The notes under the pieces are model-generated. The model ran no database searches. It was not told the DNA's origin and saw only the letters and a list, made by a program, of their open reading frames with translations. From NCBI GenBank assembly GCA_964252035.1, contig OZ176200.1: a DNA stretch of 64,000 bases; one strand, given 5' to 3'. Position 1 is the first letter of the stretch; every line of letters starts with the position of its first letter. Positions 3,085-43,030 of the stretch are shown piece by piece. The stretch is from Podarcis erhardii (lineage: Eukaryota). Made by a program: the position numbers and the translations under genes.

Positions 3085-3224
3085 GCGTTGTCAAAGTGGA
3101 TTATGGAGACGTATCAGTCAGAAAAGCATTGAGAGAGAACTTAAAATGCAAACCGTTTTCATGGTACCTAGAAAATGTCTATCCAGACTCCCAGATTCCC
3201 CGACGATATTACTCCCTTGGAGAG
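3085..3224 (+). CDS. GALNT13: GALNT13 internal coding exon (end of catalytic domain and linker)
   Basis: T-rich tract with ACAG acceptor (AG 3083-84); 140 nt; donor GAG|GTATGA. Encodes (G)[46 protein letters not shown], which has GALNT13 rather than GALNT1 residues ([11 protein letters not shown]). Confidence 0.97.
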
Positions 3225-10247: not shown

Positions 10248-10346
10248 ATCAGAAATGTTGAGACGAACCAGTGCTTAGATAACATGGGACGCAAGGAAAA
10301 TGAAAAAGTTGGCATATTCAACTGCCATGGTATGGGAGGAAACCAG
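10248..10346 (+). CDS. GALNT13: GALNT13 exon, lectin alpha repeat
   Basis: CCCCTAG| acceptor; 99 nt, phase 0/0; CAG|GTAAAA donor. Encodes [33 protein letters not shown]. Too short to appear in the ORF track. Confidence 0.97.
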
Positions 10347-10529
10347 GTAAAAATGAAGCTCACTTTATCGTCAAAACAATTTTGGGAAAGAAATTTTTTT
10401 TTAAGACTGAGTACATTGTAACAATTGTGAAATCAAGCCAGTGTTTATTACACACATTACTCTTTCCACACTTTCCAGTCTGGATGGCTTTAAAAGGGGT
10501 GGTTAGACCAGTTAAAGATAGGCACGACA

Positions 10530-10582
<53 letters not shown>

Positions 10583-10890
10583 TTTATACCCTGCCCATCT
10601 GGCTGGGTTCCCCAGCCACTCTGGGCGGCTTCCAACAGAATATTAAAATGCAATAATCTATTAAACATTAAAAGCTTCCCTAAACAGGGCTGCCTTCAGA
10701 TGTCTTCTAAAAGTCTGCTAGTTGTTTTTCCCTTTGACATCTGGTGGGAGGGTGTTCCACAGGTTGGGTGCCACTACCGAGAAGGCCCTCTGCCTGGTTC
10801 CCTGTAACTTGGCTTCTCACAGCAAGGGAACTGCCAGAAGGCCCTCAGCACTGGACCTCAGTGTCCGGGCAGAACGATGGGGGTGGAGAC
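10530..10890 (-). mobile_element. 5'-truncated L2 LINE 3' end with (TAA)n tail
   Basis: (TTA)n followed by CCCTGCCCATCTGGCTGGG...CAGGGCTGCCTTCAGATGTCTTCT...AAGGCCCTCTGCCTGGTTCCC; the antisense strand encodes the L2 C-terminal GTRQRAFSV-type motif. Confidence 0.88.
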
Positions 10891-11490: not shown

Positions 11491-12846
11491 GTAATCAAAT
11501 CAGAACACGGACTCGAAATCCAAGTCCAAACTCAAGCTCAGGTGAACACAGACCACTGCAGACGTAACACCTCATTTTGCCATTTGTTGTTTCCTTGACT
11601 GGGTAGGCTCCCAAAGATGAGAGAGGGCATGGGAGTCAGTGGGAGAGGGGCAGCAGTGCAGACTTTTGCCCTATAGAGCAAAATTTGTAAATCCAGCACA
11701 GTTTAAAGGTATAAAGGTCCTCTTATTGCTGGACCTTATAACTTGCTTAGAAATCCAAAAAAGATGAGGCTGGAATTGTAACATTCAGCACAGTGTTTGC
11801 CATTCTAAAATCAGTTGCTAGTTGCCAATGTAATGCTGCACATGTGTATTTTGGGTTTAACCATATGTAAAAATGCCTTGCAAAAAGCTCTAGGGCATTG
11901 TATCTAAATATTAGAACATGTGGAAGTAAAACATGCTTGAATCTGCTTTTAATAATCTTTTCCCCTTTTAAAGCACCCTAATTGGTAACTTAGTATGATT
12001 TGCATGCATTCCCTAATTGGTAATGCAATCAAGTTCAATTTGCATGCTTTGCCAAAGGCTTTCAACAATTAATTGGCGAAAGGTTGCTTTCAACAATTAA
12101 GAGAAACTACTTTTCCTGTAGATTTCATTAGAATACTTTAAATCAATTGGGAGGTGAATTCTAAGTAATTGGGAGTCTTGTAAATAATTAAAATAGCTGC
12201 CACATAGGTTGCTTTAATTTGTCTTCATTGTTTTTCTGACCTGGGACTACCTTAATCCCATCTGGCAGTGTGGAATTCATAACTTTTCCTCCCTTGTACG
12301 TGTATTTTTCCCCCTTCTCTCTTATCTTCCCCTCACCCTGTTTCTCTCTAAAGAACAAAGAACAGAAGGCTGTGGTGATATTGCTACCAGGATTCAGTGT
12401 AGTGCTAAGCCTAATGTTCCATCAATTCAACAGATTATTATTATTATTATCATCATCATTATTATTATAATACTTCCACATTATAATGTGTGTTTTTTAT
12501 TTTAAAAAGGGGCATGAAGCAGTCACAGTTTCAGCAGTTAAAAAACCCATGTTTCCTGAAACCAGTGACACTTCAAAAGCAGAGCAGGCTAACCTTTGGC
12601 ACTCCAGATATTGCTGAACTACAACTCCCATAATCCCTAATCAGTGGCCATACTCACGGGGGCTCAGGAGGGTGCAGAACAGAATGCAGAAGTAGCTTCA
12701 GAAACAGCATTAAGAAGATGAAAATGGGACTCTGTAATTGCACAGGGTGAAAAGGAGAAAGTGTTATTGTGGGGTGAGAGTGGGGTGGAAAGTCCCCTAG
12801 TAATACATACTTTAAAAAAAATAATGCCAATAACTATCTCTTCCAG

Positions 12847-12981
12847 GTATTTTCATACACGGCTGACAAGGAGATTCGTACAGATGATTTGTGTTTGGAT
12901 GTGTCTAGACTCAATGGTCCTGTGATCATGTTAAAGTGCCACCACATGAGAGGAAACCAACTTTGGGAGTATGATGCTGAG
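12847..12981 (+). CDS. GALNT13: GALNT13 exon, lectin beta repeat
   Basis: CTCTTCCAG| acceptor; 135 nt, phase 0/0; GAG|GTATTT donor. Encodes [45 protein letters not shown]. Confidence 0.97.
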
Positions 12982-13649
12982 GTATTTATTCAAACACAGA
13001 AGGAAACCAAACGTAGTGTTACTAATCATGTTCAACTTTTATTGCCAGGGTCTCAAGATGAACAGGCAAAACCTGTCACATGTCCTAGAATGTGTTGCTG
13101 CTTTCAATTTGGCAAAAGATCTTTTGGCCATGGCTGGACTTGGTGTTTCCTGTAATTTGTCCACAGACCTATGAGCCTTTCAACTTTATTCAGAATATCT
13201 GGGGAAAACAAACCTTGCCTGCACCCACCACCCCACCGCTGACTTTTAACTCCCGATGTCACACTAACTTGAAATCTTCCAGGATACATCTAACACAATT
13301 AAGTGTGGTGAGAAGGTATATATTGGTTGAGTATGTGCATACGAAGTCCAAGGTATGTGTGTGCATATATGTACATGTTCACGCACACATCATGGTAAAA
13401 TTAGTAAGGCTTGGTAGGCCAGTTGTGCAGGTCATGTGATCAAAGAAAGCAACGAGAAATGTTTATGCATTTGCAGGTATACATAAAATAGTAAATTAAG
13501 TGGCAATGCTGTCTTAGAAGGGAGAAGAGCTGATGCTTAGTTAGCTAAGTTTGTGGCTTTGGTCAGGAACATTTTCTTCTGGCATGAAATTTTCAGTCCT
13601 TTTCCCAACTTCAGATCCAGATCCAGAAACTGTAACTGAGGATTTCATT

Positions 13650-13652
<3 letters not shown>

Positions 13653-13692
<40 letters not shown>
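13653..13692. repeat. (AC)n microsatellite
   Basis: About 20 AC units. Confidence 0.97.
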
Positions 13693-13695
<3 letters not shown>

Positions 13696-15637
13696 AGCTC
13701 AAATTGTGTTTGGAGTCTGGGTTGTAACCAGGGGCTGGTTAAGTTGGATCCTGCCAAGGGCTGAGTAGCTAGGAGCCTGCACATGTGTGCACTATTAGAA
13801 TTGTTCACTGGCAGAGCAGGAAAGACAATGAAAAGCCAAGCTTTTGAGTTTCTGGTCCGGGGGGTGTTGATACAGCTCCTTGCCACGGATGCAAGAGACC
13901 TTAGGTCCATCTCTGTTTGGAGTGCCTTCTGTAGACCCACCCACTATCTCAGCCACCTCCTCTCCTGATCGTCAAGTGTTCATCATGAAGCTCTGCAGGG
14001 CGATTCCAACCAGGGTTCCCAGTTGCAGGGAGAATTCTAACTCTGATCAACTGCATGCAGTTTGAATCCCCCTTTCGGACCTTGGTGCAAAATACATAAA
14101 GGCTAGGAAATAAGACAACATACTAGGGAACTTGGGGTGGGATTTTACACCTCCCCATTTCTAGCCTACACACGCTGTTTTGAATGCCTAAAGAGAGATT
14201 TATCATTGTAATGTTTTCTTTGTTGGGCTCAACTGTTCAGAAACTACATCAGGAGTGGATCTTAGTGCTCCCATCTTCTAATGGCAGTGAGTCACTAGGT
14301 ATAAATTATACCAGTGCCCCAGGGTCTATTATAGTCTTCTTATAACTTTGGAGACTGTGGAAGACAGTGCTTTTGACTTACTATGAATGGCCCAAAACCT
14401 TCCTATGTACAAGACTGACATTTCTCCTACATTTCACGACAAGCTCTTAAATTGACTGAAGGCACCATTTGGGCTATATCTTTCATATACCCACATGATG
14501 AGATTGCAAATAGAAGTGTTTTCAGCAGCTGGTGCTAGAGAATGACTGAACTGCTAGTTTGAGTGCAGAAGGAATGGGGGGGACAGGAATACACTTTCTG
14601 GTTCACCTTGAAAATTGATTTATACAGTAATTTTTGAAACTTATAATTTCTGCAGTAATCTGCTTCCCAACATGCCAATAATATACAAGCCCTCGCTCGT
14701 TATTCCAAGGCTGCTTTCATTCTTGGGGAATGATATACAGGACGATAAAATATGCAGTACCGTAAATTACTGTGACTCGATCCATGATTGTACATCCATA
14801 AATACTGCTGCTGTAGAATATTTGGGATGCAAAAAGAGAAGATGATGATAGTTTCATCATTGTAAAAAGGCATATTATAAGAAGTATATGAGTACTGGAA
14901 AGCTGTAGAACTAGTCAGAGCAGTGCAAATCATTATTTTGCAAATACTTGAATGTAGCTTGTTAGGAGAATATTCAGCGATTTAATGTACTCACTGAACT
15001 AGTTCGCCCAAGTGTATTTTGCACTTGACAATGATAGCATCAGATGGTAGCGTTTGTGTGTGCGAGCACAGACCATTTGCAGATTGAATTCATATGAAAG
15101 TTCCCACAGCCATAGAGGAACATTTCATTCAACCAGCACCTGTATATGATTTTAAAAACCCACCAGTGGCATCATTCACTCTCTTAAAGCATGTAAAGGC
15201 ACAATGTGAGTGGACTTGTGTTCTAAAGTCAAGTGCTGATAAATCAAATGCTGTATCTGCGTGGAGCAGCCCAATATCCCCTCAGCAAATGGCGTTTGCA
15301 CTGACATCACCTCTCTGAAAGCACATGATAAGGCCATTACCTTGCTTAAGCTAAACACATCTGGGTCTGGTCAGTACCTAAATGAGAGACCTGCTAGGAA
15401 TTCCATGTATACTGCCACTTTCCATAATGGAAAAAGCAAGGAATAAATGATAGAAAATAAATAAATATCTGAGCTATTGTAGGGGAATTTTCCATACAAA
15501 CCATTTGTGGGTGCAAGTAACTTCTTTGGATAGGTTGGGAGTGGTTTTTGCATTTGTTTTTTTTATTTTACTTCCAGTTCAGTAATACATTTTTGGGGTT
15601 CTCCTGTTCAGATTAGTGCTTCCATTTTGACGACATA

Positions 15638-15882
15638 CAGTGGTACCTCGGGTTACATACGCTTCAGGTTACATACGCTTCAGGTTACAGACTCCGCTAA
15701 CCCAGAAATAGTACCTCGGGTTAAGAACTTTACCTCAGGATGAGAACAGAAATTGTGTGGCGGAGACGGCGCAGCAGCAGCAGGAGGTCCCATTAGCTAA
15801 AGTGGTACCTCAGGTTAAGAACAGTTTCAGGATAAGAACAGACCTCCAGAACGAATTAAGTTCTTAACCCGAGGTACCACTG
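15638..15882. mobile_element. Tigger-like MITE
   Basis: TA TSD; perfect 18-bp TIR CAGTGGTACCTCGGGTTA; internal tandem duplication of GGTTACATACGCTTCA. Confidence 0.92.
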
Positions 15883-17063
15883 TATTTGAAATGTTCAATG
15901 GATTTCTTTTTTAAATAAAAATGCTTTTTCTTCTGTAGTTATGGTTCCACAAGTGGAGAACCACTACAGAAAAGGCCCTTGTGCTGCCCCCCCCCAGACT
16001 TCTCATGGAGGAGGCACAAGAAAAAGGGCCTCCGATGATGATTGCAGGATATGAATAGATTCCTGTGGAGAAAGGCAGTCCTTGAAAGGAGGAGAACGAT
16101 TTTCCCAACTCCCCCTCCTCTTCATGGTCCCATAAAACCTGTTATAGAAGGTTCCCCCAGTGCATATTTTCAAGGGATGGCGTGGGCTCCAGGAGAAAGG
16201 GGGAGTCAGCAAAAATAGTACCATCTCCTCCTCTGTTAAAAGATGTCTCCCACTGGAACAATAGCACTAGTAAGACCAACTGGATTCTGGTCTGTGAATT
16301 CAACTTTTCCTCAGTGAATTAGAAAAATACATATTCACACCACAGAATATATATCTGTGATATATGTGTCACCCATCAACAGAGAATATTTTTCAGTTAA
16401 GAACTGCTGTTCTCTTAAGATGGAAATACATGGATATATTATCAATTAGTGAACGAAACTTCTAGTAATCTAGTAAGATTAATCTAGTAATCTAGTAAGT
16501 TTTTTAATAAGTTGGCAAAATTGCTAGTTTTACAACATTTGTAAAATTTATTTGATAATATTTTAATGTTAGGTTCAGCTGAAACTAACTCATGCTTGGG
16601 TTAGACACATTGAAATGAAATGGACATAATTAACTTATGGCCCATTGATTTCAACAGGCCTAACTCCCAAACATAATAAAATATGGATACAATCCTATGT
16701 TCAGAAATGGTCCACAAAAAATGCCTAATCAAAAACATGTTTTGCTGTAGAGGGCTTTTTTGTTTTTAATAGCTTGCAAAACGTGTAGAAGCATCTTGTA
16801 AAATCTGTGTTGGCCATTAGATGGAGCCAGCAAAAAAGAAATATTTTATGGCTCAGCTCCTATATTAAGAAACTCTGTTAAGAAGACAGCTTGTCATTAT
16901 TTTAATCTGTAACTTTTGTTATGATGTTATTAATTTACATTCATACAGAAAATAATTTTAATAAAAATTGCAGCTACTCCATGCTGAAATGTATGCTGCT
17001 TGATTGTAGAGATGCTATCAATTCTTTTTCCACTTTTGCAATATTAGTCCTGGGTTTAAGCTT

Positions 17064-17158
17064 TAGATAGATGATTGATAGATAGAGATAGAGATAGAGA
17101 GATAGATAGAGAGATAGATAGATGGATGATAGATGGATGATTGATAGATAGGAGATAG
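17064..17158. repeat. Compound (GATA)/(GAGATA)/(GGAT) microsatellite
   Basis: Direct reading of the sequence. Confidence 0.9.
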
Positions 17159-17469
17159 AGCTTTCAGTTTTACTTTTCAAAGACTGGAAATGAACACTGA
17201 ATTTTTTGCTATATAAGAGGTTTGCAGAGCTGTGGTTGTTTTGTTTTTTTCTCTTCTCCCCCCACCCTATCTGCATATTTGTGCTTCAAAATACAATAAA
17301 TAGCAAATTTCTTGTTCTTACAGTAGTGTGTTCATACATTATGTATTGTATCCAGTGATTTTTGTGCACAAATGAAATAGAAGTTATATGCAAGCATAAC
17401 TGCAGACACAGTGGACCTTGTGTTTCTTCTCTTCCTCATGTGCAGTGCATTCCCCAAATTGCTCTACAG

Positions 17470-17912
17470 CAGGGATGTCCAACAGGTCGATTGCGATCTA
17501 CTGGTAGATCCCCGGGAGGTTTGGGTAGATCGTGGTCGATCTCTGGGTGCCTTTCCTTAGCGTTGGTAAAATAGAATCTGGCTCTGCCCCCTCGCCCCAC
17601 CCTCCATTGTTGCACGATCTTCAGAACGGAAGACAGAGCTTACTCAGTTTGTTTCCCTAGTGATCTGTTGGTGAGTGGCTGGTGGCTGTTCTTTCTCCCT
17701 TGAACTTAGGCTTGAATTCTCAAAAATCGGGGCTTTGCTCCTCCCTAAAAAAGCTCAACAACTTTTACCTGAACCCCCCCAAAATGAGGCTTCCCTTCCT
17801 AAAAAAAGCTGAACAACCCTGACCTGAACCCCCCCTAAAAAAAGGGGGTAGATCACTGCCAGTTTTTAATTCTGTGAGTAGATCACAGTCTCTTGGGAGT
17901 TGGCCACCCCTG
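17470..17912. mobile_element. Non-autonomous hAT (Charlie-like) element
   Basis: TIRs CAGGGATGTCCAAC / GTTGGCCACCCCTG; 8-bp TSD CTCTACAG / CTCTAGAG; subterminal GTAGATC repeats. Confidence 0.85.
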
Positions 17913-20084
17913 CTCTAGAGGGTTGAGTGGTCTTCCAGGGCAGATTTGCAAAGTGTGGAGAAAGTAGAATAAGGAGAAGTTCTGTTGCAGAAAGAACTTG
18001 CTCCTGCAATGTTTGATTCGACTCTTATGAAAATAAGGTTTTAAAACTTTCATCCAATTTCCCCGTCAGCACAGCTGTAGGATCCCTTTTTGTTTAGTAT
18101 TTTGCGTAGTTATTTGTTTATTGAGCAACACAAATAGCTAAAATACTGGGATAATCCTGCCAAATTTAAGCACTCTTAATTCTGACTCATTTAAATGCTA
18201 CAGCTAATTTTGTGTGTAACTGAGGGTCAAAAGAGACATGACACAGAAGAGTCATCATTCTACCTGTCTCTTTAAGGGTCTGAGGGGAGTGCCAATTTTG
18301 ATCAGAGCTGCAACACGGGGTGGGTTTAACCCTTCTATGGTATTTCCCTATTCTGAATCATCTGTGTCCCCAGCTGCTATTATTCCACAGTGGAAAGACA
18401 GGAGAAGGGAACAGGGGTGTACAATTGTTTTGAAAACAAATACAAAACAAAATGAATGAGCCCAATTTGTCGTCTTTGCTGTTGAATGAAAATGAGTGGA
18501 AAAGCAGAATAAGCAGAATGTCACCCATTTCATTTTCCCATTTCAATTTCAATTGCCTTCCTCTTGAGGCACTCTTTTGTGTTATCTGGAACACAGTATA
18601 CAGTTCGTAGAAAGGTCACAATGGAGAGGGCAGTGAAACTTGCAGATTAGAAAGTTGCATTTAGTTTACATAGGTTATGTCTGTGTGCTTTATTTTTTAA
18701 ATTGCCTTTGTTTGAGAACTCTTTGTGGAATTTGGCAGTTCCATTGGCCTTAGTGGTGAAAGAATGCCATAAATATTTCATACTGTTAGTGAATAAAACT
18801 TAGAAGTTACAAGCAGGAATTTAATGTTGAATGGAAGGCTTAGAGAATGCCTGTTTTGTTTTTTTAATTAATTCCACTTTGTCCAACATAACTAATGTTC
18901 AGTCATGTAGTAGGATATTGGTTGAAAAAGTTCAAGGTTCTCACAAATAGTATCTGAGATGGTAAACCTTTCCATGGGACTAAAAGGGGGGGGGGAATCC
19001 CCCATGTAAAAAAAACTTATACAGTATGTCAACCAGAAGACTATGCTACCACCCTTCTCAATGATCTAGTAGTTTTCAGTATGCAAGAAAGTTTCTCCGT
19101 TTAGGGTTAACCTTTTTTAGTTTGTTTACTGCATCTGGATGTTTGGGGTTTTATTTTACTCTTTGCTGACAATTTAGAGCTATTCCAAGTTGAAGAATAT
19201 GCAAGTTTTAGGAGAGAGCTTTTACATTTCTTGTATCAGCAAAGCACACACTCCTCTTGTGTTATGAAAGATCATAAACTCTTTAGAAATTCACTGTGCT
19301 GGTTTAGTGCATGCAACAGCTTGACAGTCAAAACTTTGATGAAGCAATTTGTAATATATCTCTAGCATTGCTAAATATACCAATGTGAAGTCTGAGAGTA
19401 TTTCTGTTGCTTGTTGCTTCCATGAGGAAAATGTGACTATGGATTTTTAAATGGGGGGAAACCATCCCTTTTCATCTTTTATGAACTTATTACTGATGAA
19501 AGTTCAAACCTCCATAGAAATTTAGCTTTGGGTTAAAGAAGAAGCATGAAAATTGTTTTCCTCAAGCTGAACTGTGAGCATATGGAAGACAGAAGACTCA
19601 TAATAAATACTAATAGCTGATGGGTTAAGAAATTTGTAATATATGTCAACAAATCAAATAAATACAGGCTTACTCTAGGAGTACCAAAATGCACTGTCAT
19701 CCACTCACAAGAGTTAGCATCTGACTTGGGGAAACCTCAAAGTTTGCAGAAGTGTACTCTAGAATAAATACCCTAAGGGTAGGGTGAAGGACACAAAAGA
19801 GCCCAGTGATGATTGAATATTTTCATTGGCCACGCTGTCTGTTTGCAGGGGCAGTGCAATGGAATATCCTGGAGATATGACTGGCTGTAACCCTGAACAC
19901 AGTTCCACATTACAATGTTTTGTTTCAGGTCCTTCTTCCTATCACTTCCTAAATCCAAGTATTGCCCATGCCTGCCTGGTACCTCTTTCTTGCCCCAACT
20001 CAAATGCCCTAAAATGGTATCCCCTCACCTGCTAGGGCTGAGCAAGCATCCCACCTCTTCCTTCTCTCCCCAGAGTACATAGAC

Positions 20085-20220
20085 CAGGTTTCCTCAAACT
20101 TGGCCCTCCAGATGTTTTGAGACTACAGTTCCCAGCATCCCTGACTACTGGTCCTGCTAGCTAGGGATCATGGGAGTTGTAGGCCAAACACATCTGGATG
20201 GCTGAGTTTGAGGAAGCCTG
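20085..20220. mobile_element. hAT-type MITE
   Basis: TIRs CAGGTTTCCTCAAACT / AGTTTGAGGAAGCCTG; TSD ACATAGAC / ACATAGGC. Confidence 0.88.
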
Positions 20221-20530
20221 ACATAGGCAGTTCTCCTGCTACTGTACGTTTCCATCTCCTTTGTTTGCCTAGTCATGAGATCTCCCTCTGCAAATTAGGA
20301 AACTATCAAAGCATGAGACTCCACATCCTTCACAAACTCTACTCAGATTTAGTAATCCCACTCCCTGGATGTTGTGCCCTGTCTTCTGCTCTCCAACACT
20401 CCACTCCATTTCAGGGTCCCTGGCGATGGAGGTATGGGAGAAGAGAGTTCTTCAACACCTCCTCTTGTCTCTCATCCAAATAAGACGGCTAGCTTCTCAA
20501 GATCTTTGTGCCCCCATGATTGCTGAATAA

Positions 20531-22432
20531 CACTGGGCAACAATTTTTTACTTTTTGAATGTTGTCTAGATTTCTACAACTGATTTAGGGTATTTTTGCA
20601 CTGCTGAATCAGGAAATGGCATCCGTTTCTCTCCATCAGGTCAGGTTTTCTGTAAACTGAATGGTGGGCATTGATAAAGGTAAGTACACGTAAATTGCAT
20701 GTTGCTTCACCATTTTTCAAACTTCAGGGCTTGAACTTCTGTTTCTTGGAACGCCTGGAATGCTCAGCAGCATGGAGGTCTCTCTTCAGAGTCCAACAGT
20801 AGTCAGCCATCATGACTGTGTCCCAGCGACCCTGATACCTGGTCTCCATCTCTTTCATGTCCTGATGAAATCTCTCCCCCTGCTCGTCACTCATTGAACC
20901 CAGGTTCTCAGGAGACCGGTCCATATGTGAAAATAGGTAGTGCTCATGTTGCAGCACAGGTTTCTGAAAGCAGTCAGCATGTTGTTGACAAGTTCTGCGT
21001 AGTTTCTGGCCTTATTGTTGCCAAGAAAGTTCTTCACTACCAGAACAAATGCCTTCCACGCTTCCAGTTCCACTTTGTTCATTGAGTTTCCGAACTCTGG
21101 ATCTCTGATGAGCTGACGGATCTGAGGACCATCAAAGATGCCAACTTTCAACTTCTCCATGGTCAGTCCTGGAAAAGCCTGGCACAAGTAAATGAAGCGG
21201 TCACCATCCTTGTCCAGAGCCTTGGTGAACTGCTTGATTAAGCCAAGCTTGATGTGCAGCGGTGGGAAGAGTATTCTGTCTCTGTCCACCAGAGGGTCGT
21301 TGATGACGTTCCTTTCTTTGCAAGGCACCAATTCCTCCCGCACAGGCCAATTCTTCTTCGTGTAATGCTGAGCACGGTCCCTACTATCCCACATGCACAG
21401 AAAACATGGGTACTTGGTGAAGCCAGACTGTTGTCCCAACAAAAAGTTCACCATCTTCAGGTTAACACAAATAAACCACTTATGCTGATCATAACCAATT
21501 TTCTCCAGCACATACTTCACCGCTTCATAGTTCTCGTTCAGTGTACTCGAGTGAGCCGGGGTATAGAGGCAAACTGGTTGCCGTTGTGTAGCAGAACACA
21601 TTTCAGTGATCGCTTGCTGCTGTCAATGAACAGTCTCCAATCTTTGGGTTCATACTGTGGCACTCCAAGCTTGAGCAGAAGCTGCGCAATATCTGCACAG
21701 TACACCAAGTCCTTTTCTTCTGAGAAAAAACGGAGGTACTCTTGATGCCTGTTGCACAAGAAGCTGATGCGAGCACTGTCAGAGAGGAGGTTTTTTTCCT
21801 TCAATCTGGATGCCAACAGTTCGGCAGAGTCCTTTGACAAGCTGAAGTCGTGAACTAGATCATTCATCTCCTTTTGGGAAAATGGATGTGGAGCATCATC
21901 TTCAAGAACCACTTCTTCCTCATGTCCTTCAACACTGGAGGCATCTTCGTCACTAATGTCAGGAAGTTCTCCGAAGATAGGCACTGGAATTTCATCACAA
22001 TGAGCTACAGGACGATGTGCTGATTGAAGATCATGATACTTCGTGGGGCAGCTGCCCCATTAACTTAGTTTTGATCCCCCAACTTTATGCTTTGCTGGAC
22101 CAATTTATGGAAGATTTCGAGGTTTTATGACTTCAAACTGATCCCTTTTCGACATAATCACCCAGAACTATCGGACCTGAATACTTCTTGTCATTAAAAT
22201 AATCATTTCCAATCAAAACAATTATTTGACAAGGCATTTTACCCCCACCAACTTCTTCTAAAATGCTCCACACAAGCGTACATATGAACAAAAATGTAAA
22301 AAAAGACATGTGGCCATAGCTCAAAAACTTGACCTGATTGAGCAAAACCAATGTGATTTTTGGATTCAGCGCATCAGATTCATCCTAAATCAGCTGAAAA
22401 AACGCAGACAACAAATTTGTTGTTGACCAGTG
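20531..22432 (-). mobile_element. Chapaev3-type (CMC superfamily) DNA transposon, 1902 bp
   Basis: Termini CACTGGGCAACAA and revcomp CACTGGTCAACAA (12/13). TAA TSD at 20528-20530 and 22433-22435. Subterminal inverted blocks (TGATTTAGG, GCTGAATC, ATCAGGTCA). Encodes a transposase. Confidence 0.9.
20724..22041 (-). pseudogene. Frameshifted, N-terminally deleted Chapaev3 transposase
   Basis: Three consecutive frames give ...RPVAHCDEIPVPIFGELP...WRLFIDSSKRSLKCVLLHNG / GQQSGFTKYPCFLCMWDSR...PPLHIKLGL...FDGPQIR / HYLFSH...SDEQGERFHQ...MMADYCW. Two frameshifts (near 21560 and 20940). The N-terminal Cys-rich domain is absent. Confidence 0.9.
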
Positions 22433-25400
22433 TAATCAGACAAGACAGGGCAGAGAGAGAATAAAAGCCCAGCTCTATATTAGTACATGGAGGAACAGAC
22501 GCTTCATCTTCCTCCCATTGTATTCAAGTCTGAAGAGAACCTACATGTGTACAACTGGAGCAGACAGAGCACCCAATAACTTAACAAAAGCCAGTATTCC
22601 TGATAATGCATACAGACGCTATATGAGTATGCTCTGTTCAGAGCTTCAAATGAATGAATAGAAATCAGAAACATGGAGATCAGACATTGTTCCAATTTAT
22701 CTTCCCCCCATGTTCACCGAAATTATGAAAAGGACTGAAATGAATTCGTGTGCTTTATCTGAAGCAATGGTACTTACTGTGGCCGTTTGTCTATATATGG
22801 ACAAAAATTGGTTACCCTTTGTAGCAGATAATGATAATTGCGTCTATGGTGGGCAACTGCTTTTGCAATCCACTTATCCTGTGAAGGAGCAAAAATTGCC
22901 CTAACATTATTTGTGTGTATTAAAGGCTTTCAGTATGTCAGATTCAAAGAAAAGTAAGTTATCATCCGCCCTTAGTTGCTGGAAATGTGAAATGTCTGCA
23001 GGTATACATGAAAATGTAATCAGATAAGTGAGTAGTGTTTCTAATTTATATTGAGGACTAGTATCATTTTCAAAGAAGTGTTTGTGGAAAGATGTGTATT
23101 GACAGTAAGACATTTTCTGAGTCCTGGTTTAACTGCATGTGAAATTTATTTGCTTTTGTCAGTATATAGGTAAATGGGAATACAGCTTTGAGGTAAGTGT
23201 GTTGAAAACTGGCAAACCTCGTGATTGATTCTAGAATAGGACCTTGCTTGTTTTACTGCTGTGGTGGTACATATGACCTTGGCTTTCAGTAGATTGTGTT
23301 TTATTATGGCTCACTATAAATTTCCTGTAGTTGAAAATATTACATTGTAGCTTTCTAGAGACAAAGAAAGGGGGGGGGGGAGAGAAAAGAAACATATTCT
23401 GAAGATATGTAGCAGAAAGGACCAGAATGTCCTTTCTTAAATATGCTCTGTATTATTTCAGGACTTGATTTGTTTTAAACTATACAATATTAGAGTGTTC
23501 TTTTGAAACATGTTAAGGAAAACTTCATTTATGGCTTTTTCCTGCACCTGCGCAAATGAGTTGACAAAACTCCCATTGATTTTGGTGCTGCATCATAAAT
23601 CTTCTGCTAAGCACTTACAGCAGAGCATCGGGCCACGTCCCCCGAGAGATTCATTGATCATCTAACTGCACTCCTTTAGCTTCATTCATTCACGATGTTG
23701 ATACACTTGCAGGGTACACTTGTAAGCATTCTTTAACCGGTCAGAATCTCCAGGAATACAGCAGAAAACTTGGATCCCTACTACAGAGCAAAGCAATGAG
23801 AACGTTGGGTATGAATGTCTGGATCTGACAAATAGGGAAACTGTTTAAATTATAACCCAAGCTTTCATTTTAAAGCCAAATAAAATAGATTGTCACTACA
23901 GAAACACAGCCTTGTTGCTTTGAGGAACCAGCTGTTTTTAAAGTGTTGTTTTTTTGGGGGGGGTGGGTTTTTTTGTCTAATAATCCATGGTGGTCTAATA
24001 AGCCTTGGCAGGCATGCAATTATTAATGGCATTGGCTAGTGTGATAACTAGCTTCTCATTGAACACTGCAAATTATTTAGATGGCTGATAATGCTTCTGC
24101 TGCACAGGTTTTTTTTAAGGTTATGGTAACCAAGCAGCAGAGGTTTTGGAAGATCTGGCATATAATTCAGAGCCTCATCTAGATTGAAGGCTGTTTACTT
24201 TCCACAACACGCTTTTTGTCTGTAAACTGAAAGACTAATAATTTCATGAGGTTCCTTGTTTTCCTCTAAATTAGCAGGATAAATGAAAAACCAAACAGTG
24301 CGGGAGGTTGGTTCTGTGCATGAATTTGAGATGAGCTTAGCTCCTTTGAATTCAGCACAGCTCATTGGAGGCAAGACTACAGTATTTGATTATGTTCCTT
24401 TTCGATCTGAAGCCTTCTGCTAAATTGTTCTTACTTTGTTTATAATTATCTGTTGAATCTGCTGGATATATGTGTCTATAATAAATATTTAAATACGCAA
24501 GATTATTAAATCTTCCCATTGATTTATTCAGATGACATTTCCTTTCCACTAGTGAAAAAGAGAGAAAAGGAAGGACATGAACTTGCATCTCATAATGAAA
24601 CTGAAGCAAAAAAATTGATGTGCCAGCCGCTTACTCAAAGTGACATTATAAGGACATTCATTCTTGAATTTTCTTATTGTTTTCCATGCGAATACACTCT
24701 TAATCACACACGCAAATGTATGCTGCAGTGACTTACTATTATTTATTTATTTATTTATATCTGCCCTTGTTTATTTAAATCTGCCCTTCCTTGCAGATTT
24801 ATATCTGGGAGGGGTACAAAGCATAAATTAAAAGTTTCAAACTACAGCCATCCAACAGATTAAAAGAAGCAGATGAAATAACAGGGAAGCCAGCAACAAT
24901 AACAACTTTCTAAATCCAACCAAGTGAATGAACCTCCCATACAGTTTATGCTAAGAATAACTGGCTTTTCAGCTGTCAGTTAGACAGGGAACCACTAATC
25001 AATATATGTTTTGTTTTGTTTTGTTTTGTTTTTAAAAGTAAATGAAGGCTGAACTCAAGAATAGCTGTTAACATATTTGACTGCTATTCTTCATGTTGTT
25101 GGGTTTGAGGCATTCTGCTTAGTATTTTCCACTTAGCCAGTTTAGTCTATACATAGTAGGGAAGACACACAGGCTGAATTCATTAAAGTATGATTGTTGA
25201 TACCTGCACAGCTAGAGGACAAGAGAGAGAGAGAGCTCATTGCAACAGCTGGCTCCATCATTCTTCTCCCACAAAGCACTGGGAGGGCATTGCATCTTGA
25301 TGCAATGTACAGTGTGGTCCCAGTGCTTTCTGGGTGGAGAATAATAGCACAATCATCCTTTTCCCTCAAAGCAAAAATAAAATATAATTCCCACTTGCAC

Positions 25401-26326
25401 TTTCATGTAGTATAATCCCGCAAACCGTAGACTCTTCCATACAACTCTTTTGAATGTAATTTTCGTCTAGCATTTTTTATTATTAAAAAGAAGAAGGGCA
25501 ACTCACTTGAAACAGGGTGATCAAGAAAACTATCATTTGTACAATAAATACTTTACTCAGCAAAGCAGGTATGACCACAGAAGAATGGACCACATGGCTT
25601 ATAACTAGTACGACTGATAAGCCTCATTCCCGGTTTATTTTACACCTGGAGTCAATTCTGAAGCATTTTATGTTAAGCTTTCCTCCCTGTCACTCTGGGT
25701 GAGATTTGAAGCACACTTCTGCTCACATGAGGGGAAGCACTGCAATGTCTGCCATTGCCACCAAGGTGAGATCCCAGGTCATTGCAGAAGATTCCCCAAC
25801 TCCCAGAAAGAACTTGGGCAAAGGACTGCAGGAAGTGGAAGCAGGAAAGCCCCACTGCATGAGTGGAACTCCTTTTACAGCTCTTTCAATCCTACCCATT
25901 GAGTAGGATCCAGTGGAGCCCTCAGGGAATTCTCTCAGCACAAGGATTTCTCTTTGCACAACAGAATGCCTTCCCCCTGTGGGTCCCTAAATCTGTCCTA
26001 GGGCTTCCCCTTGGAACAGATTTGGGAAGGACTTGTGCAATTAGCAATCCTTGTGTTTATGGGACTCATTAGAAGACTAACTCCCATTGTTTCTGGATTA
26101 AGATTTGGAAATCTTGAGTTGATTAAATCTGTCTAGTTTTAAGGAAGTCATGTAACTGGTGGGTACTTTTTTCAAGATTAAATCTTACAACTGTACTTGA
26201 GAACATCACTTGATCTGGTTTGTTGAGCTTCCCTTTGCCAAAGGCCCAGTAGTGTTTTTCTTCTCTTTTCCATTTTTTATGTGATTTCTGTCTCTTTGTT
26301 TGTTTACCATTTTTCTTGTCATACAG

Positions 26327-26512
26327 ACGCACACATTTCTCCATATCATTACCCAGTCATGTTTGACCATAAGCAGAATAGAGGATGGCACTCGGGGTCC
26401 CACAGTGGAGACATGCAATGGCAGCCCCTTTCAAAAGTGGCTACTGAGAAACTACACGCGACTGGAGGTTTTTAGGAACATTTTTTACAGTCCCACTGAC
26501 TATTTTCTTTAG
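26327..26512 (+). CDS. GALNT13: GALNT13 alternative exon encoding a second lectin gamma repeat and C-terminus
   Basis: Long pyrimidine tract with ATACAG| acceptor; phase 0, in frame with the 12847-12981 exon; 61 codons plus TAG. Encodes THTFLHIITQSCLTISRIEDGTRGPTVETCNGSPFQKWLLRNYTRLEVFRNIFYSPTDYFL*. Keeps H, both Cys, QxW and LLRNxT of the gamma repeat and resembles the alternative human GALNT13 C-terminus as I recall it. Confidence 0.88.
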   Translation, partial: THTFLHIITQSCLTISRIEDGTRGPTVETCNGSPFQKWLLRNYTRLEVFRNIFYSPTDYFL

Positions 26513-26700
26513 CAAATGTCTCGAGGTTGGTATCAAAGGCGCAAAAAGAAAAAGCTAAGCTCCTTGCTTGCTTGCTTGTGCTCTTTCCCCATTTTCTCCC
26601 CTTGTTTAGTTTTTTACATAGTGTTAAGATGTAGAAACAACAGCTTAGAAATAGCATTAGTTTATGCTGCTTAGCTCTGGGTGTGTTTAAAACAGTCAAC

Positions 26701-26750
26701 ATTAAAAGTCGCATTTGATTGTCCTTTGTGGTGTATGTCTTTTCTCTTTT
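26701..26750 (+). promoter_or_regulatory. Candidate polyadenylation site for the alternative exon
   Basis: ATTAAA at 26701-26706, followed by a GU/U-rich tract (TTGATTGTCCTTTGTGGTGTATGTCTTTCTC), about 190 nt after the TAG. Confidence 0.5.
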
Positions 26751-27965
26751 TGCAAAAAACTGTGAATTAGAAAGCATGGCTTTTGTGTTCCCCCTAAACA
26801 TATAGTAGCAGTTGTATTGATGGCTACTCCTATTCCTTGCTTTAGCCACTGTGATGCAAAGAAAGTGTTGTTATTGTTTTCACACCTAGAAAGGGCATTC
26901 TCTGCACTGCAAAACAGATGGGGAAATCTGTTCGGCATGATCCTGTTTTTGCCAGGTCATTAATGCACTGGTGCCAGCAGGGCACGTCAGGTCGAAGGCC
27001 CTTAACACCCACATAAAAATTGCAGGATATTCAGATGTACAACCCGAACTCCTGTATGGTACACCATCAGCACTGTTACCCAGCATTGGGTCAACTATGA
27101 TATTTAAGTTTATTGTCAGTTTTATCAATTGCATTTTGGTTGCTAAAGATGCATTGTTTAGCTTGGCACAAATGCCTCCTCTCAGATATAAGAACTTCCA
27201 TGCAGTCAAACTGGGCCTTTGAGGGCTCATCCAGACTTGGCAGCAAAGTGCACATTCTCCTGGTCTGTTTACCACCTTCCTCAGGTCCGCCTAATTATTT
27301 CTTCGGTAATCCATTCTTTTTGGTGTCCTAACATGAAATGGGCATATATAATATAGTGGACTGTGCCACTCCCCCCCCCAAAAAAAATTGGCATCCATCT
27401 TCTCCTGCAGCCCCAAACTCACTGCCACCCCATCCCGGTTCCATCCATGGTATTATTTCCAGGGCACTTTTTGAGTGGTTTCATTTTTAGTGTGTGTGTG
27501 TGTGTGGTTTTGGAGCAATCTCTCTTTACCTGAATTTATTTTGGGGCTAAGCTCATTCTGAACAAAAGTGAAGTGATTCCACGAGCTGCAAGGGGGGCAG
27601 GACTCTGTGGACACAAAGAAGAAAAGCCATTTCTAGACAGGATTGCACTCTTCTTGAAAGGTTCAAGTTCATAGCTCACGGGTTCTTAGGGACCCAGCCT
27701 TGCTTCTAGGCCATAGTTGTGTCCTAGAATGTACTAGCTCCAAGCTGTTTAAGTTGTCTGTGCCCACTGTTGGAAGACTTGATTACTCACATCCAGGCAT
27801 AGGCAGCTCGTGCTTCATGTGGGGCTGCCCATGAAAAGTATTCAGAAAATCTGATCAGTGCAGAATACCACAGCTGAACTCATGGCTGGAGACTGTGAGT
27901 TGGCATATGCACAGGACACCTATATAGAAATTGCCACATTGGCCACCAGTGTGTGGCCTAAACCT

Positions 27966-28315
27966 AAAGGTAAAGGTAAAGGACCCCTGACAGTTAAGTC
28001 CAGTCGCAGACGACTCTGGGGTTGCGGCGCTCATCTCGCTTTACTGGCTGAGAGAGCCGGCATTTGTCTGCAGACAGTTTTTCTGGGTCATGCGGCCAGC
28101 ATGACTAAGCCGCTTCTGGCGAAACCAGAGCAGCGCATGGAAATGCTGTTTACCTTCCCACCAGAGTGGTACCTATTTATCTACTTGCACTTTGACGTGC
28201 TTTCAAACTGCTAGGTTGGCAGGAGCTGGGACCGAGCAACGGGAACTCACCCCGTCACGGGGATTCGAACCGCCCACCTTCCAATCGGCAAGCCCTAGGC
28301 ACCACCTGCGTCCCA
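27966..28315 (-). mobile_element. Sauria SINE (antisense)
   Basis: (AAAGGT)n tail on the left, GGATTCGAACC B box on the right; 9-bp TSD CCTAAACCT (27957-65 / 28316-24). Confidence 0.92.
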
Positions 28316-30235
28316 CCTAAACCTTAATGACCTAAGGACCAGGACATCTCAGAGAAACACATTTTCTGATACAATCTTTTCCAGAGGTGGAAATCCTGCT
28401 TCAGGTTCAGTCGTTTGGGTCTCCTCAAGAGCCATTCTGTTTTAGCTGACTATTATTTTGACTGTATCTTATATCCTTTTTAATGTGTGGTTTCATGGAA
28501 TTGCTGTTTGTGCCTCTCTGGAAACAGGAGCTGAAAGGCAGCCTATAAAATCCTGTAAGTAAATACAATTAAATAAATAATTATGTTCTTGGTAATTATC
28601 TTGTATAGTAGGTACATATAGTAGGTACATCTTGGTAGTAGGTACCCAGAAATGCGTCATAAATAAACCCTGAGTATTTCTCAATGTGGTAACGCCATTT
28701 ACAAAGCCACCTCAACCCTTTTTGCACTTTTCAAGCAGTATCATACCACTTTAAGTTGACATGCTTCCCTCGCACCCCAAGAATCCTGGGAGTTGTAGTT
28801 CGTTAAGGGTGTAAAGCATTGTTAGGAGACCCTGATTCCCCCTCACAGAACTACAGTTCCGTATGGTTTAGCTATGGAACTCTTGACTCTTTAAAATGGT
28901 ATGATGCTGTTTTTAAATGTATAGTCCAGATGAAGCCTTAACAGTGCTGTACAAAAGTTATATTAAAAAGAACAAACCCTGCCCATAGACTTACAAATTA
29001 ACGGGTGTATTAGCATGGTCATTGTTTCTAGTCTAGACATTTCCAGAGCATTTTAAGATATCTTTTATAAGGCAAATGTCAGTTTTCCTGTCGATATTTT
29101 AGGTTAAGAATTTAAAACATTTGCATCAGTAATGTTACCTGTCCAAGTTGCTGTTGAGCGTGTGCGCGCGCACACGTAAAGATTAACTTAACACTTACTC
29201 TTTGTCCTAAAATGAATGGGTGTTTTTTCTTTTCTTTTAAGCAAGCTTGCATATGCTTGAGTAAGAAAGAAAACTCTTCTTATTTTTTTAAAAAAACCTG
29301 TTTTTATGAGTGTTTAAACAGCTAGAGATTGCTGCAGTATAATCATCTTTATGGTGAAAAATGAAGTAAATTCTAGACTGTGTGGTTTTGTTGTTAATAT
29401 TTTCCCAAGGTAATTGATTGCTGACCAAACAAAGAAAGCTCTTTCTAATAGCATACATAATTATGGAACCAAAGAAGTAAGTGCTTATAGAAGACTGTTA
29501 AAAAAACCCTCAACAATATGTTTGTCTGGCATGAAATTATGTAACAAATACAAAGGAACAGCTGATGGGAGGCAGCACGGTATCAGTTTCCTTGGGTTTG
29601 TAGATTTGCAATATCACCAGTTTAATTAATGCTAAAATACGTTATTTCAGCAATCCTGAATCTTTTCTATGGACAGCACACAAGTTGCATAGGTTAACAG
29701 TGCAGTTTTTAATGTCTCTTAAAAGGATAGGAAAAGGCTCTGTTCTTACAGAGCTGCAAAATATTAAACAGCCTTAAGGTGATTTAATTTAACAGGTGTA
29801 GATGTTTCTTTGGGAATTCCATGACAGTTCGTTCAAAGTAAGAGCAAAACCTCAAGGGAGATGATGCTTCCCCAGTTGAAATTGTACAGCGCACAACATT
29901 TAGAAATGTGTAACGCATGTCAATCTAGCATGGAATAATGTGAAATCATTTTGCAAAAGTTTAGATGTTTGTGCAATCTCATCATTGCAAACCATCTCAG
30001 GGAAATGGCTTAATTTTGAAATCAGCAATGAATAAACATTTCAGTGGTGTTGCAGCATGCAGTTCTGGTTTTCCTTAATGCCATCTGTGAAGATGCTAAA
30101 CAAGAACTTCTAACTCTGAATAAAAAGATACCAGCCCCAAAGTTTACCATTCTGTTTTTCTGTTATCAGTGATTGAGCAGACCGACCTTACAAGGTCTAG
30201 ATCCATGCAGCTGATGGATATTTATGGATAGAGAA

Positions 30236-30278
<43 letters not shown>

Positions 30279-30334
30279 TTTCTATCCCTGCTCATTTATT
30301 ATTTATATCCCGCCACTCTGGGTGGCTCCCAACA

Positions 30335-30368
<34 letters not shown>

Positions 30369-33253: not shown

Positions 33254-33394
33254 CGACTTACCTTGAGGCACATCAACAGCAACCAATGTCTCGATGAACC
33301 CTCTGAAGACGACAAAATGGTTCCTACCATGAAAGACTGCAGTGAAAGCCGATCTCAGCAGTGGCTGCTCCGGAATATGACCTTGGGTGCCTAA
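33254..33394 (+). CDS. GALNT13: GALNT13 canonical last coding exon (lectin gamma repeat)
   Basis: TTTCTTTTGCAG| acceptor; 141 nt. Encodes [46 protein letters not shown], the characteristic GALNT13 C-terminus. Confidence 0.97.
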
Positions 33395-42897: not shown

Positions 42898-43030
42898 NNN
42901 NNNNNNNNNNNNNNNNNNNNNNNNNNNNNNNNNNNNNNNNNNNNNNNNNNNNNNNNNNNNNNNNNNNNNNNNNNNNNNNNNNNNNNNNNNNNNNNNNNNN
43001 NNNNNNNNNNNNNNNNNNNNNNNNNNNNNN
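42898..43030. other. Assembly gap (133 N)
   Basis: Run of N. Confidence 1.

What the first reader, a model, noticed from the sequence alone, without database searches (positions are those of the whole stretch)
26327..26512. Second, intact lectin gamma-repeat exon: a swappable carbohydrate-binding module in GALNT13
Seen: an uninterrupted phase-0 exon 6.7 kb before the canonical last exon. It keeps the beta-trefoil scaffold (H, C..C, QKW, LLRNxT sequon) but changes CLD to CLT, adds an NGS sequon and extends the tail by 15 aa. Established: the Asp of the CLD motif binds GalNAc in active GalNAc-T lectin repeats, and the lectin steers glycopeptide site choice. I recall a matching human isoform (THTLLHIITQSCL...), so this is probably not new, but an intact lizard copy would show it has been retained since the amniote ancestor. 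Inference: isoform switching retunes O-glycosylation site preference or enzyme trafficking in neurons.
Basis: partly seen in the sequence, partly recalled or inferred. Interest (0 to 1): 0.78.

Follow-up and report, generated by a model that had tools for sequence, protein, structure and literature searches.

The report
Known alternative GALNT13 lectin-tail exon
This is a real alternative coding exon of the neuronal O-glycosylation enzyme gene GALNT13, kept from fish to mammals, but it is already annotated in many vertebrates and it replaces a part of the lectin domain that does not bind sugar, so it is an ordinary finding.

Summary
Window 26327-26512 (+) is an uninterrupted phase-0 exon of 61 codons plus a stop. 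It lies behind a strong acceptor, between the GALNT13 lectin beta-repeat exon (12847-12981) and the canonical last coding exon (33254-33394), and it is that exon's paralogue (43% identity, E 1e-9).

It is not new. Annotated GALNT13 isoforms join ...EYDAE directly to this exon in two snakes, four birds, three amphibians, pig and two teleosts. GALNT13 is also in a published catalogue of human tandem-duplicated-exon substitutions.

In 12 genomic copies the exon always has 61 codons (62 in pig). The stop position is fixed, the cag acceptor is conserved, and pN/pS is 0.09-0.32, as low as for the canonical exon. The exon therefore dates at least to the bony-vertebrate ancestor, not only the amniote one.

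- The gamma repeat of GalNAc-T1/T13 does not bind sugar. Neither gamma version has the Asp/His/Asn triad, so this is not a swap of a carbohydrate-binding module.
- A donor-like GAG|GT lies 8-35 nt after the stop in every copy. The exon is probably a stop-carrying cassette that escapes NMD, not a separate terminal exon.

No RNA data could be had for this lizard. The scan listed this same stretch once before (s1-254803).

The parts
3085..3224 (+). GALNT13 exon encoding the linker between the catalytic and lectin domains (...[26 protein letters not shown]); starts in phase 1 and ends in phase 0
   Evidence: Sequence read (acag|GC ... GAG|gtatga). The translation is identical to the Vipera latastei GALNT13 protein P0026.
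10248..10346 (+). Lectin alpha-repeat exon ([11 protein letters not shown]...CHGMGGNQ), with a complete Asp/His/Asn triad
   Evidence: Pfam Ricin_B_lectin E 9e-7. Orthologous exons are 94% identical in the fish-like loci.
12847..12981 (+). Lectin beta-repeat exon ([18 protein letters not shown]...LWEYDAE), donor GAG|gtattt. It is common to both isoforms.
   Evidence: Pfam E 2.5e-9. Annotated isoforms join its last codon to the alternative exon.
23163..23192 (+). Conserved 30-nt phase-0 microexon (YIGKWEYSFE), ttgtcag|TAT...GAG|gtaagt. It is included between the beta exon and the alternative exon in frog and Arapaima isoforms.
   Evidence: The same microexon with both splice sites is present in loci L001, L002, L005, L007 and L011, and in proteins P0036 and P0037.
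26295..26326 (+). Polypyrimidine tract and cag acceptor of the alternative exon
   Evidence: The cag acceptor is conserved in all 12 orthologous loci. The blastn block shared with birds starts at 26295-26312.
26327..26512 (+). Alternative gamma-repeat coding exon: 61 codons plus TAG. It carries CLT, the Cys pair, QKW, the NYT sequon and a 17-residue tail ending in TDYFL.
26513..26533 (+). 13 nt after the stop, then the donor-like GAG|GTTGGTAT (GT at 26526-26527). If this site is used, the exon ends at 26525.
   Evidence: a GAG|GT or CAG|GT site lies 8-35 nt after the stop in all 12 loci; the conserved block shared with birds ends at 26534-26537; only 3-7% of random 40-nt windows hold such a site.
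33254..33394 (+). Canonical last coding exon (gamma repeat, 46 codons plus TAA)
   Evidence: phmmer against GalNAc-T1 (1xhb/8v9q) gives E 5e-18. Orthologues lie in L001 and L003 in the same order.

Best explanation
The stretch is the lizard orthologue of a long-known alternative coding exon of GALNT13. It arose by tandem duplication of the last coding exon.

When it is spliced to the beta-repeat exon (12981 to 26327), it replaces the canonical 46-residue gamma subdomain of the ricin-type lectin domain. The replacement is a diverged 61-residue gamma subdomain that keeps the structural elements: the disulfide Cys pair, the QxW motif and the N-x-T sequon. It adds a strongly conserved 17-residue C-terminal tail ending in TDYFL.

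Translation stops inside the exon. A conserved donor-like site lies 13 nt behind the stop, so I infer that the exon is a cassette spliced on to the canonical last exon, which then serves as 3'UTR. With the stop less than 50 nt from the last junction, the message would escape nonsense-mediated decay.

The gamma repeat of the T1/T13 subfamily is not a GalNAc pocket. The switch most likely changes a structural or interaction property of the enzyme (the C-terminal tail, glycosylation, or domain packing), not a sugar-binding site.

What is shown: the exon, its splice signals, its homology, its orthologues, purifying selection on it, and its use in annotated isoforms of other species.

What is inferred: expression in this lizard (about 0.9), cassette rather than terminal exon (about 0.65), and the functional consequence.
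For: - Anatomy and phase.
- Paralogy to the canonical exon: 18/42 identical, E 1e-9.
- The exon aligns with the last 46 residues of solved GalNAc-T1, E 1.4e-4, and runs 12 residues beyond that protein's C-terminus.
- 14 genomic ORFs at 69-90% identity cover the whole exon including the tail.
- Named isoforms in Vipera, Crotalus, Gallus, Ciconia, Melopsittacus, Caloenas, Rhinatrema, Lissotriton, Rhinophrynus, Sus, Salvelinus and Arapaima join ...EYDAE or its equivalent to this exon.
- The exon order alpha, beta, alternative, canonical is the same in other genomes.
- There are no indels, the stop position is fixed while the stop codon itself varies, and the acceptor is conserved.
- Pairwise dN/dS is 0.01-0.39, and 49 of 61 third codon positions vary against 22 and 16 at positions 1 and 2.
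- pN/pS is 0.09-0.32 with Fisher p from 8e-6 to 3e-15, like the canonical exon at 0.13-0.34.
- blastn conservation with fish-like loci is bounded exactly by the exon, 26323-26511.
- A donor-like site lies 8-35 nt after the stop in all 12 loci: a strong consensus in fish-like loci and GAG|GTTGGTAT in lizard and birds. It scores the same as the gene's own constitutive beta-exon donor. No conserved poly(A) hexamer was found.
- Triad comparison of the four repeats.
- The gamma Asp of T1 is dispensable, and the alpha and beta repeats bind GalNAc: PMC10901373.
- GALNT13 is listed among human tandem-duplicated-exon substitution genes: PMC9741552.
- Split-chain fold test of the alpha, beta and alternative gamma pieces: score 0.44 against a best control of 0.06, rated weak support. 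The runs agree in at least 73% of contacts and the partner pLDDT is at least 58. That mark was reached by 51 of 78 solved complexes and 2 of 108 mismatched pairs.
Against: - There is no RNA evidence for this genome. No run on record as RNA holds the stretch. The four runs that were laid gave only scattered low-depth contigs, one of which crosses the acceptor unspliced (26281-26460), as DNA or pre-mRNA would.
- The tetrapod donor-like sites (GTTGGT, and GTTTGT in pig) are weak by a simple weight matrix, so a terminal exon with its own, unconserved poly(A) site is not excluded. An ATTAAA lies 189 nt after the stop in the lizard.
- The annotated isoforms are gene models, and I could not see their UTRs.
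- The structure model of the lectin domain with the alternative gamma was too poor to use (mean pLDDT 45).
- That the human Ex10b variant has unaltered in vitro activity is my recollection of Festari et al. 2017, which the library does not hold.
Confidence: 0.8

Rival explanations
1. The exon is an alternative 3'-terminal exon with its own 3'UTR and poly(A) site, chosen in competition with the canonical last exon.
For: The stop codon lies in the exon. An ATTAAA lies 189 nt downstream and further hexamers about 2.1 kb downstream in the lizard. C-terminal substitutions are the most enriched class of tandem-duplicated-exon events (PMC9741552). The tetrapod donor-like sites score low on a simple matrix.
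Against: No poly(A) hexamer is conserved in position among the 12 loci. A GAG|GT or CAG|GT site always sits 8-35 nt after the stop, which is expected by chance in only 3-7% of such windows per lineage. Sequence conservation between lizard and birds stops about 10 nt past that site.
Confidence: 0.3
2. The exon swaps a carbohydrate-binding module. The Asp-to-Thr change removes or retunes a GalNAc pocket, and so changes glycopeptide site preference.
For: The Asp of the CLD motif contacts GalNAc in active repeats (established knowledge, restated in PMC10901373). That position is Thr or Ser in every orthologue of the alternative exon and never Asp.
Against: [quoted passage not shown] T1 and T13 are described as binding GalNAc through the alpha and beta repeats. 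The canonical gamma here has Ser and Ser where the His and Asn of the triad should be, so there is no pocket to lose. From my recollection of Festari 2017, the human variant had essentially unaltered activity.
Confidence: 0.08
3. The exon is an unexpressed relic of an exon duplication, or a chance open frame, in this lizard.
For: No transcript evidence could be obtained for this genome.
Against: The frame is intact and the length and stop position are fixed. pN/pS is 0.09 against chicken, where synonymous sites are near saturation. Snakes have annotated isoforms that use the exon. Both splice signals are intact.
Confidence: 0.03

Closest known systems
Human GALNT13 splice variant 'Ex10b' (Festari et al. 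2017, Glycobiology 27:140; cited in PMC8616257 and PMC13705257) and the RefSeq/UniProt GALNT13 isoforms that carry this C-terminus in other vertebrates
   Same: The position after the beta-repeat exon is the same. The length is 61-62 residues. The HIITQSCL, QxW, NYT and TDYFL motifs are shared.
   Different: Nothing of kind; this is the lizard orthologue. The details of the human variant (its name, and activity 'essentially unaltered') rest on my memory, because the paper is not held.
Gamma repeat and C-terminus of GalNAc-T1 (PDB 1xhb, 8v9q)
   Same: Both have the beta-trefoil gamma subdomain with a Cys pair, QxW, LLRNxT and a short hydrophobic tail (RLEVF here, LPEIF in T1). The exon aligns to the very end of the chain.
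   Different: The similarity is only about 40%, against about 75% for the canonical T13 exon (24.8 against 66.2 bits). Thr stands in place of the CLD Asp. The exon has 12 further residues beyond the T1 C-terminus.
Tandem-duplicated-exon substitution events (Martinez-Gomez et al. 2022, PMC9741552)
   Same: Two adjacent homologous exons give isoforms that differ only in one homologous region. GALNT13 is in their list. C-terminal swaps are enriched, and more than 90% of events have teleost orthologues. This matches what is seen here.
   Different: The text I could read does not say which GALNT13 exons are meant. Here the exclusivity would come from a stop codon in the upstream copy, not from mutually exclusive splicing.
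Drosophila Pgant5 and C. elegans gly-5 duplicated-exon isoforms
   Same: Orthologous GalNAc-transferase genes that also have tandem-exon-duplication isoforms (PMC9741552).
   Different: They are listed as convergent and in a different region of the protein. They were not examined here.

Membership tests
GALNT13 alternative gamma exon (Ex10b-type isoform) | Lies between the beta-repeat exon and the canonical last coding exon of GALNT13, on the same strand | tested here: met
   The window order is 12847-12981, 26327-26512, 33254-33394. The order is the same in L001 and L003.
GALNT13 alternative gamma exon (Ex10b-type isoform) | Phase-0 junction directly after ...EYDAE, as in annotated isoforms | tested here: met
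   GAG|gt at 12981 and cag|ACG at 26327. The Vipera and Crotalus proteins read ...LWEYDAE then TYTFLH.
GALNT13 alternative gamma exon (Ex10b-type isoform) | About 61 codons with the conserved HIITQSCL...QxW...NxT...TDYFL motifs and a stop at a fixed position | tested here: met
   There are 24 invariant columns among 15 sequences.
GALNT13 alternative gamma exon (Ex10b-type isoform) | Spliced into mRNA in this species | tested here: inconclusive
   No run on record as RNA holds the stretch. The runs that were laid gave only unspliced, scattered contigs.
Ricin-type beta-trefoil lectin repeat (Pfam PF00652) | Sequence match to the family profile | tested here: inconclusive
   The exon alone gives E 0.062 and 13.9 bits, below the 29-bit cut-off, and aligns to profile positions 93-126 of 126. 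Full isoforms that carry it have PF00652 on record. phmmer against the GalNAc-T1 lectin domain gives E 1.4e-4.
Ricin-type beta-trefoil lectin repeat (Pfam PF00652) | Disulfide Cys pair and QxW motif of a repeat | tested here: met
   C12, C30, Q36 and W38 are invariant.
Sugar-binding (active) GalNAc-T lectin repeat | Asp, His and Asn triad (CLD...CH..GNQ) | tested here: not met
   The alternative gamma has CLT...CNGSPFQKW. The canonical gamma has CLD...CSESRSQQW. The alpha and beta repeats have the full triad. The triad is as defined in PMC10901373.
Tandem-duplicated-exon substitution event | Two neighbouring exons that are homologous to each other | tested here: met
   BLASTP 43% identity over 42 residues, E 1e-9. 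Reciprocal tblastn hits in the window and in other loci.
Tandem-duplicated-exon substitution event | Only one of the two copies is translated in any one isoform | not testable with these tools
   This follows from the in-frame stop in the upstream copy and from the annotated isoforms. No transcript data for this genome.
NMD-escaping stop-carrying cassette exon | Stop codon less than about 50 nt upstream of a usable donor | tested here: met
   GAG|GT lies 13 nt after the stop in the lizard and 8-35 nt after it in all 12 loci. The 50-nt rule is established knowledge.
NMD-escaping stop-carrying cassette exon | The donor is actually spliced to the next exon | not testable with these tools
   Read laying was limited to one call and returned no RNA.

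The most novel reading that the evidence does not exclude
The alternative gamma exon and the conserved 30-nt microexon 3.1 kb upstream of it (23163-23192) form one splicing module more than 400 million years old. The module rebuilds the end of the lectin domain, and its invariant luminal C-terminal TDYFL tail is a binding or sorting signal that gives neuronal GalNAc-T13 a partner, a location or a stability that the canonical enzyme lacks. The stop-carrying cassette design lets both isoforms share one 3'UTR.
Probability: 0.15. Interest if true: 0.5.

Novelty: already known. Interest (0 to 1): 0.22.

Why it matters
The result adds a squamate copy to an isoform that is already annotated from teleosts to mammals. 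It also shows, with explicit pN/pS values, that the alternative C-terminus is as constrained as the canonical one.

That constraint sits awkwardly beside the reported lack of any in vitro difference for the human variant. Selection is therefore probably acting on something outside catalysis, most plausibly the invariant tail.

For annotation, the useful points are the likely cassette architecture (a stop 13 nt before a conserved donor) and the neighbouring conserved microexon. Neither changes how GalNAc-transferases are understood.

Tried and rejected
- RNA evidence. The look-up of sequencing runs found no run on record as RNA. The single read-laying run on 24400-30200 gave only short low-depth contigs scattered over intron and exon, plus a very deep interspersed repeat at 27892-28473. 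This is no junction evidence either way.
- Papers. Festari et al. 2017 is not held under its PMC id, DOI or PubMed id, and 'Ex10b' occurs in no held paper about GALNT13. What I say about that variant's activity is therefore from memory.
- Accession numbers of the contigs gave no paper. Taxa were instead assigned by identity to named proteins.
- Structure. AlphaFold2 on the lectin domain of the chicken isoform, with a 12-row alignment, gave mean pLDDT 45. The model is unusable and I did no fold search with it.
- The split-chain complex test gave only 'weak support' (0.44 against a best control of 0.06).
- My Pfam query for the linker exon was out of frame (protein 5). It says nothing, and the exon limits were corrected.
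- Rbfox motifs (TGCATG) are not conserved around the alternative exon.
- Contigs behind the mammal-like ORFs P0012 and P0014 were not fetched or compared, because they might be human or primate. These two ORFs appear only in the first protein alignment. P0011 was fetched only after its exon proved identical to the pig isoform.
- A chance ORF and a decayed relic were considered and rejected on the selection data.

Full report
**1. What is there**

The + strand of the window carries the 3' part of a GALNT13 gene. Read directly from the sequence, the exons are:
- 3085-3224: the linker between the catalytic and lectin domains.
- 10248-10346: the lectin alpha repeat.
- 12847-12981: the lectin beta repeat, ending ...LWEYDAE with donor GAG|gt in phase 0.
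- 23163-23192: a 30-nt microexon.
- 26327-26512: the reported exon.
- 33254-33394: the canonical last coding exon.

The reported exon follows a long pyrimidine tract and cag. It starts in phase 0 and runs for 61 codons to a TAG.

**2. Homology**

- The exon is a paralogue of the canonical last exon: 18 of 42 residues identical, E 1e-9.
- On its own it touches the Ricin_B_lectin profile only weakly (E 0.062), but exactly at the last third of the profile, positions 93-126 of 126.
- Against solved structures it aligns with the last 46 residues of GalNAc-T1 (1xhb, 8v9q; E 1.4e-4). Its RLEVF falls on the terminal LPEIF of T1, and 12 further residues run beyond the T1 C-terminus.
- The canonical exon is much closer to T1 (E 5e-18). 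The alternative copy is therefore the diverged one.

**3. Relatives elsewhere**

A word search with the exon peptide found 14 short ORFs at 69-90% identity that cover the whole exon including the tail. All of them carry a Gln, from the cag acceptor, just before the exon. They are therefore genomic ORFs, not cDNA. Longer cluster members were also genomic.

Using two longer proteins as carriers for a search restricted to this region brought in named, annotated GALNT13 isoforms:
- Snakes: Vipera latastei, Crotalus tigris.
- Birds: Gallus gallus, Ciconia boyciana, Melopsittacus undulatus, Caloenas nicobarica.
- Amphibians: Rhinatrema bivittatum, Lissotriton helveticus, Rhinophrynus dorsalis.
- Mammal: Sus scrofa.
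- Teleosts: Salvelinus alpinus, Arapaima gigas.

In ten of them the beta exon's ...EYDAE (or its equivalent) is joined directly to this exon. In the frog and in Arapaima a 10-residue insert lies between the two. The upstream exons of the Vipera protein are identical to those of the window.

By identity to these anchors, the three groups of anonymous ORFs are birds (L003 is identical to chicken), teleost-like fish, and mammals (P0011/L015 is identical to pig). The exon therefore dates at least to the common ancestor of ray-finned fish and tetrapods.

It is also published. GALNT13 is in the catalogue of human tandem-duplicated-exon substitution events (PMC9741552). Multiple GALNT13 isoforms were described by Festari et al. 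2017, as cited in PMC13705257 and PMC8616257. From memory, that paper's 'Ex10b' variant is this exon and had essentially unaltered in vitro activity. I could not read the paper.

**4. Selection**

I fetched 12 orthologous genomic copies.
- In all of them the exon has 61 codons (62 in pig) and no indel. The acceptor is cag. The stop is at the same place although the stop codon itself varies between TAG, TAA and TGA.
- Pairwise dN/dS is 0.01-0.39. Variable columns number 22, 16 and 49 of 61 at codon positions 1, 2 and 3.
- For five deep lineages, pN/pS is 0.09-0.32 with Fisher p between 8e-6 and 3e-15. The canonical exon gives 0.13-0.34.
- blastn conservation between the lizard and the fish-like loci begins at the acceptor (26323-26324) and ends at the stop (26506-26511).

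**5. Cassette or terminal exon**

Downstream of the stop there is no poly(A) hexamer at a conserved distance. Instead, every copy has a donor-like site 8-35 nt after the stop:
- GAG|GTTGGTAT in the lizard (GT at 26526-26527) and in three birds.
- GAG|GTGAGC or CAG|GTCAGT in the fish-like loci, often followed by a second AG|GTTGGTA.
- GAG|GTTTGT in pig.

Only 3-7% of random 40-nt windows in these loci hold an AG|GT site of at least that quality. The lizard site scores the same (1.1) as the constitutive donor of the beta exon (1.0) on the same simple matrix. The matrix frequencies are from my memory, so the scores are only relative. Conservation between lizard and birds ends about 10 nt past this site.

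I therefore think it more likely than not (about 0.65) that the exon is an internal cassette, 26327-26525, spliced on to 33254. Translation would end 13 nt before the last junction. By the established 50-nt rule, that keeps the mRNA out of nonsense-mediated decay and lets both isoforms share one 3'UTR. This is an inference, and only transcript data can settle it.

**6. What the swap does**

Aligning the four repeats of the window shows:
- Alpha and beta carry the full Asp/His/Asn GalNAc triad (CLD...CHGMGGNQ and CLD...CHHMRGNQ).
- The canonical gamma has only the Asp (CLD...CSESRSQQW).
- The alternative gamma has none of the three (CLT...CNGSPFQKW).

PMC10901373 states that T1 and T13 bind GalNAc through the alpha and beta repeats, and that D444A and D484A, but not the gamma mutant D525A, lower glycopeptide affinity. 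'Swappable carbohydrate-binding module' is therefore not supported: a non-binding structural lobe is exchanged for another.

What is conserved in the alternative lobe is the scaffold (C12, C30, Q36, W38), the N42-x-T44 sequon that the canonical exon also has, and the tail with invariant T57, D58, Y59 and L61. The extra NGS sequon is followed by Pro, which by general knowledge disfavours glycosylation. It is also absent in several fish-like copies, in pig and in some birds.

My best reading is that selection acts on the tail and on surface features, affecting interaction, stability or localisation in the Golgi lumen. That part is inference.

A split-chain fold test of the alpha, beta and alternative gamma pieces scored 0.44 against a best control of 0.06. 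The tool rated this 'weak support'. The runs agreed in at least 73% of contacts and the partner pLDDT was at least 58. That mark was reached by 51 of 78 solved complexes and 2 of 108 mismatched pairs, and the calibration differs from this use. An AlphaFold2 model with a shallow alignment failed, with mean pLDDT 45.

**7. Expression in this lizard**

This could not be tested. No run on record as RNA holds the stretch. The four small runs laid on 24400-30200 gave scattered contigs of about 150 nt at depth 2-5, both in the intron and in the exon. One of them runs unspliced across the acceptor (26281-26460). This looks like low-pass DNA or pre-mRNA. It is not evidence against expression.

**8. Verdict**

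The feature is an already known, widely annotated alternative exon. The lizard copy is one more orthologue.

The modest additions are: the explicit selection figures; the age (at least bony vertebrates, not only amniotes); the probable stop-carrying cassette architecture; the point that neither gamma version is a sugar pocket; and the neighbouring conserved microexon.

The scan had listed this same stretch once before (s1-254803). The contigs behind the two mammal-like ORFs of unknown origin (P0012, P0014) were deliberately left unfetched.

Noticed in passing
window 23163-23192 (+); also L001 about 4163-4192, and L002, L005, L007, L011: A conserved 30-nt phase-0 microexon encodes YIGKWEYSFE (YVGKWEYDFE in the fish-like loci). 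It has a good acceptor and a consensus donor (GAG|gtaagt, the best donor score in this part of the gene). It resembles the end of the beta exon (..LWEYDAE) and is included between the beta exon and the alternative gamma exon in the annotated isoforms of Rhinophrynus dorsalis and Arapaima gigas (581 aa). In the lizard a TGCATG lies 22 nt upstream of it (23136-23141). No held paper links GALNT13 to a microexon apart from the exon-duplication catalogue.
   Followed up: partly
window 29410-29577 (+), matching L003 1064-1232: A block of about 170 nt in the intron between the alternative and canonical exons is about 70% identical between the lizard and chicken. It has 2-3 nt indels, so it is not coding. 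It may be a splicing-regulatory or other conserved non-coding element.
   Followed up: partly
window 27892-28473: Contig depth is enormous (up to about 3e5) in all four runs laid, with many variant letters and internal joints. This is a high-copy interspersed repeat, probably a SINE-like element, sitting between the two gamma exons.
   Followed up: no
protein P0032 (Manacus vitellinus) and P0024 (Hirundo rustica): Two public gene models misuse this exon. One fuses it to the neighbouring potassium-channel gene (named G protein-activated inward rectifier potassium channel 1). The other splices out of the exon before its stop into the canonical gamma exon, giving a protein with both gamma copies. 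Both look like annotation artefacts.
   Followed up: no
window 42898-43030: A run of 133 N (an assembly gap or masked stretch).
   Followed up: no
window 10500-10640, 12400-12470, 30236-30367: Long trinucleotide runs (ATT/AAT-type, read as poly-Ile, poly-Tyr or poly-Asn in open frames) lie in the introns. This is simple-sequence expansion.
   Followed up: no
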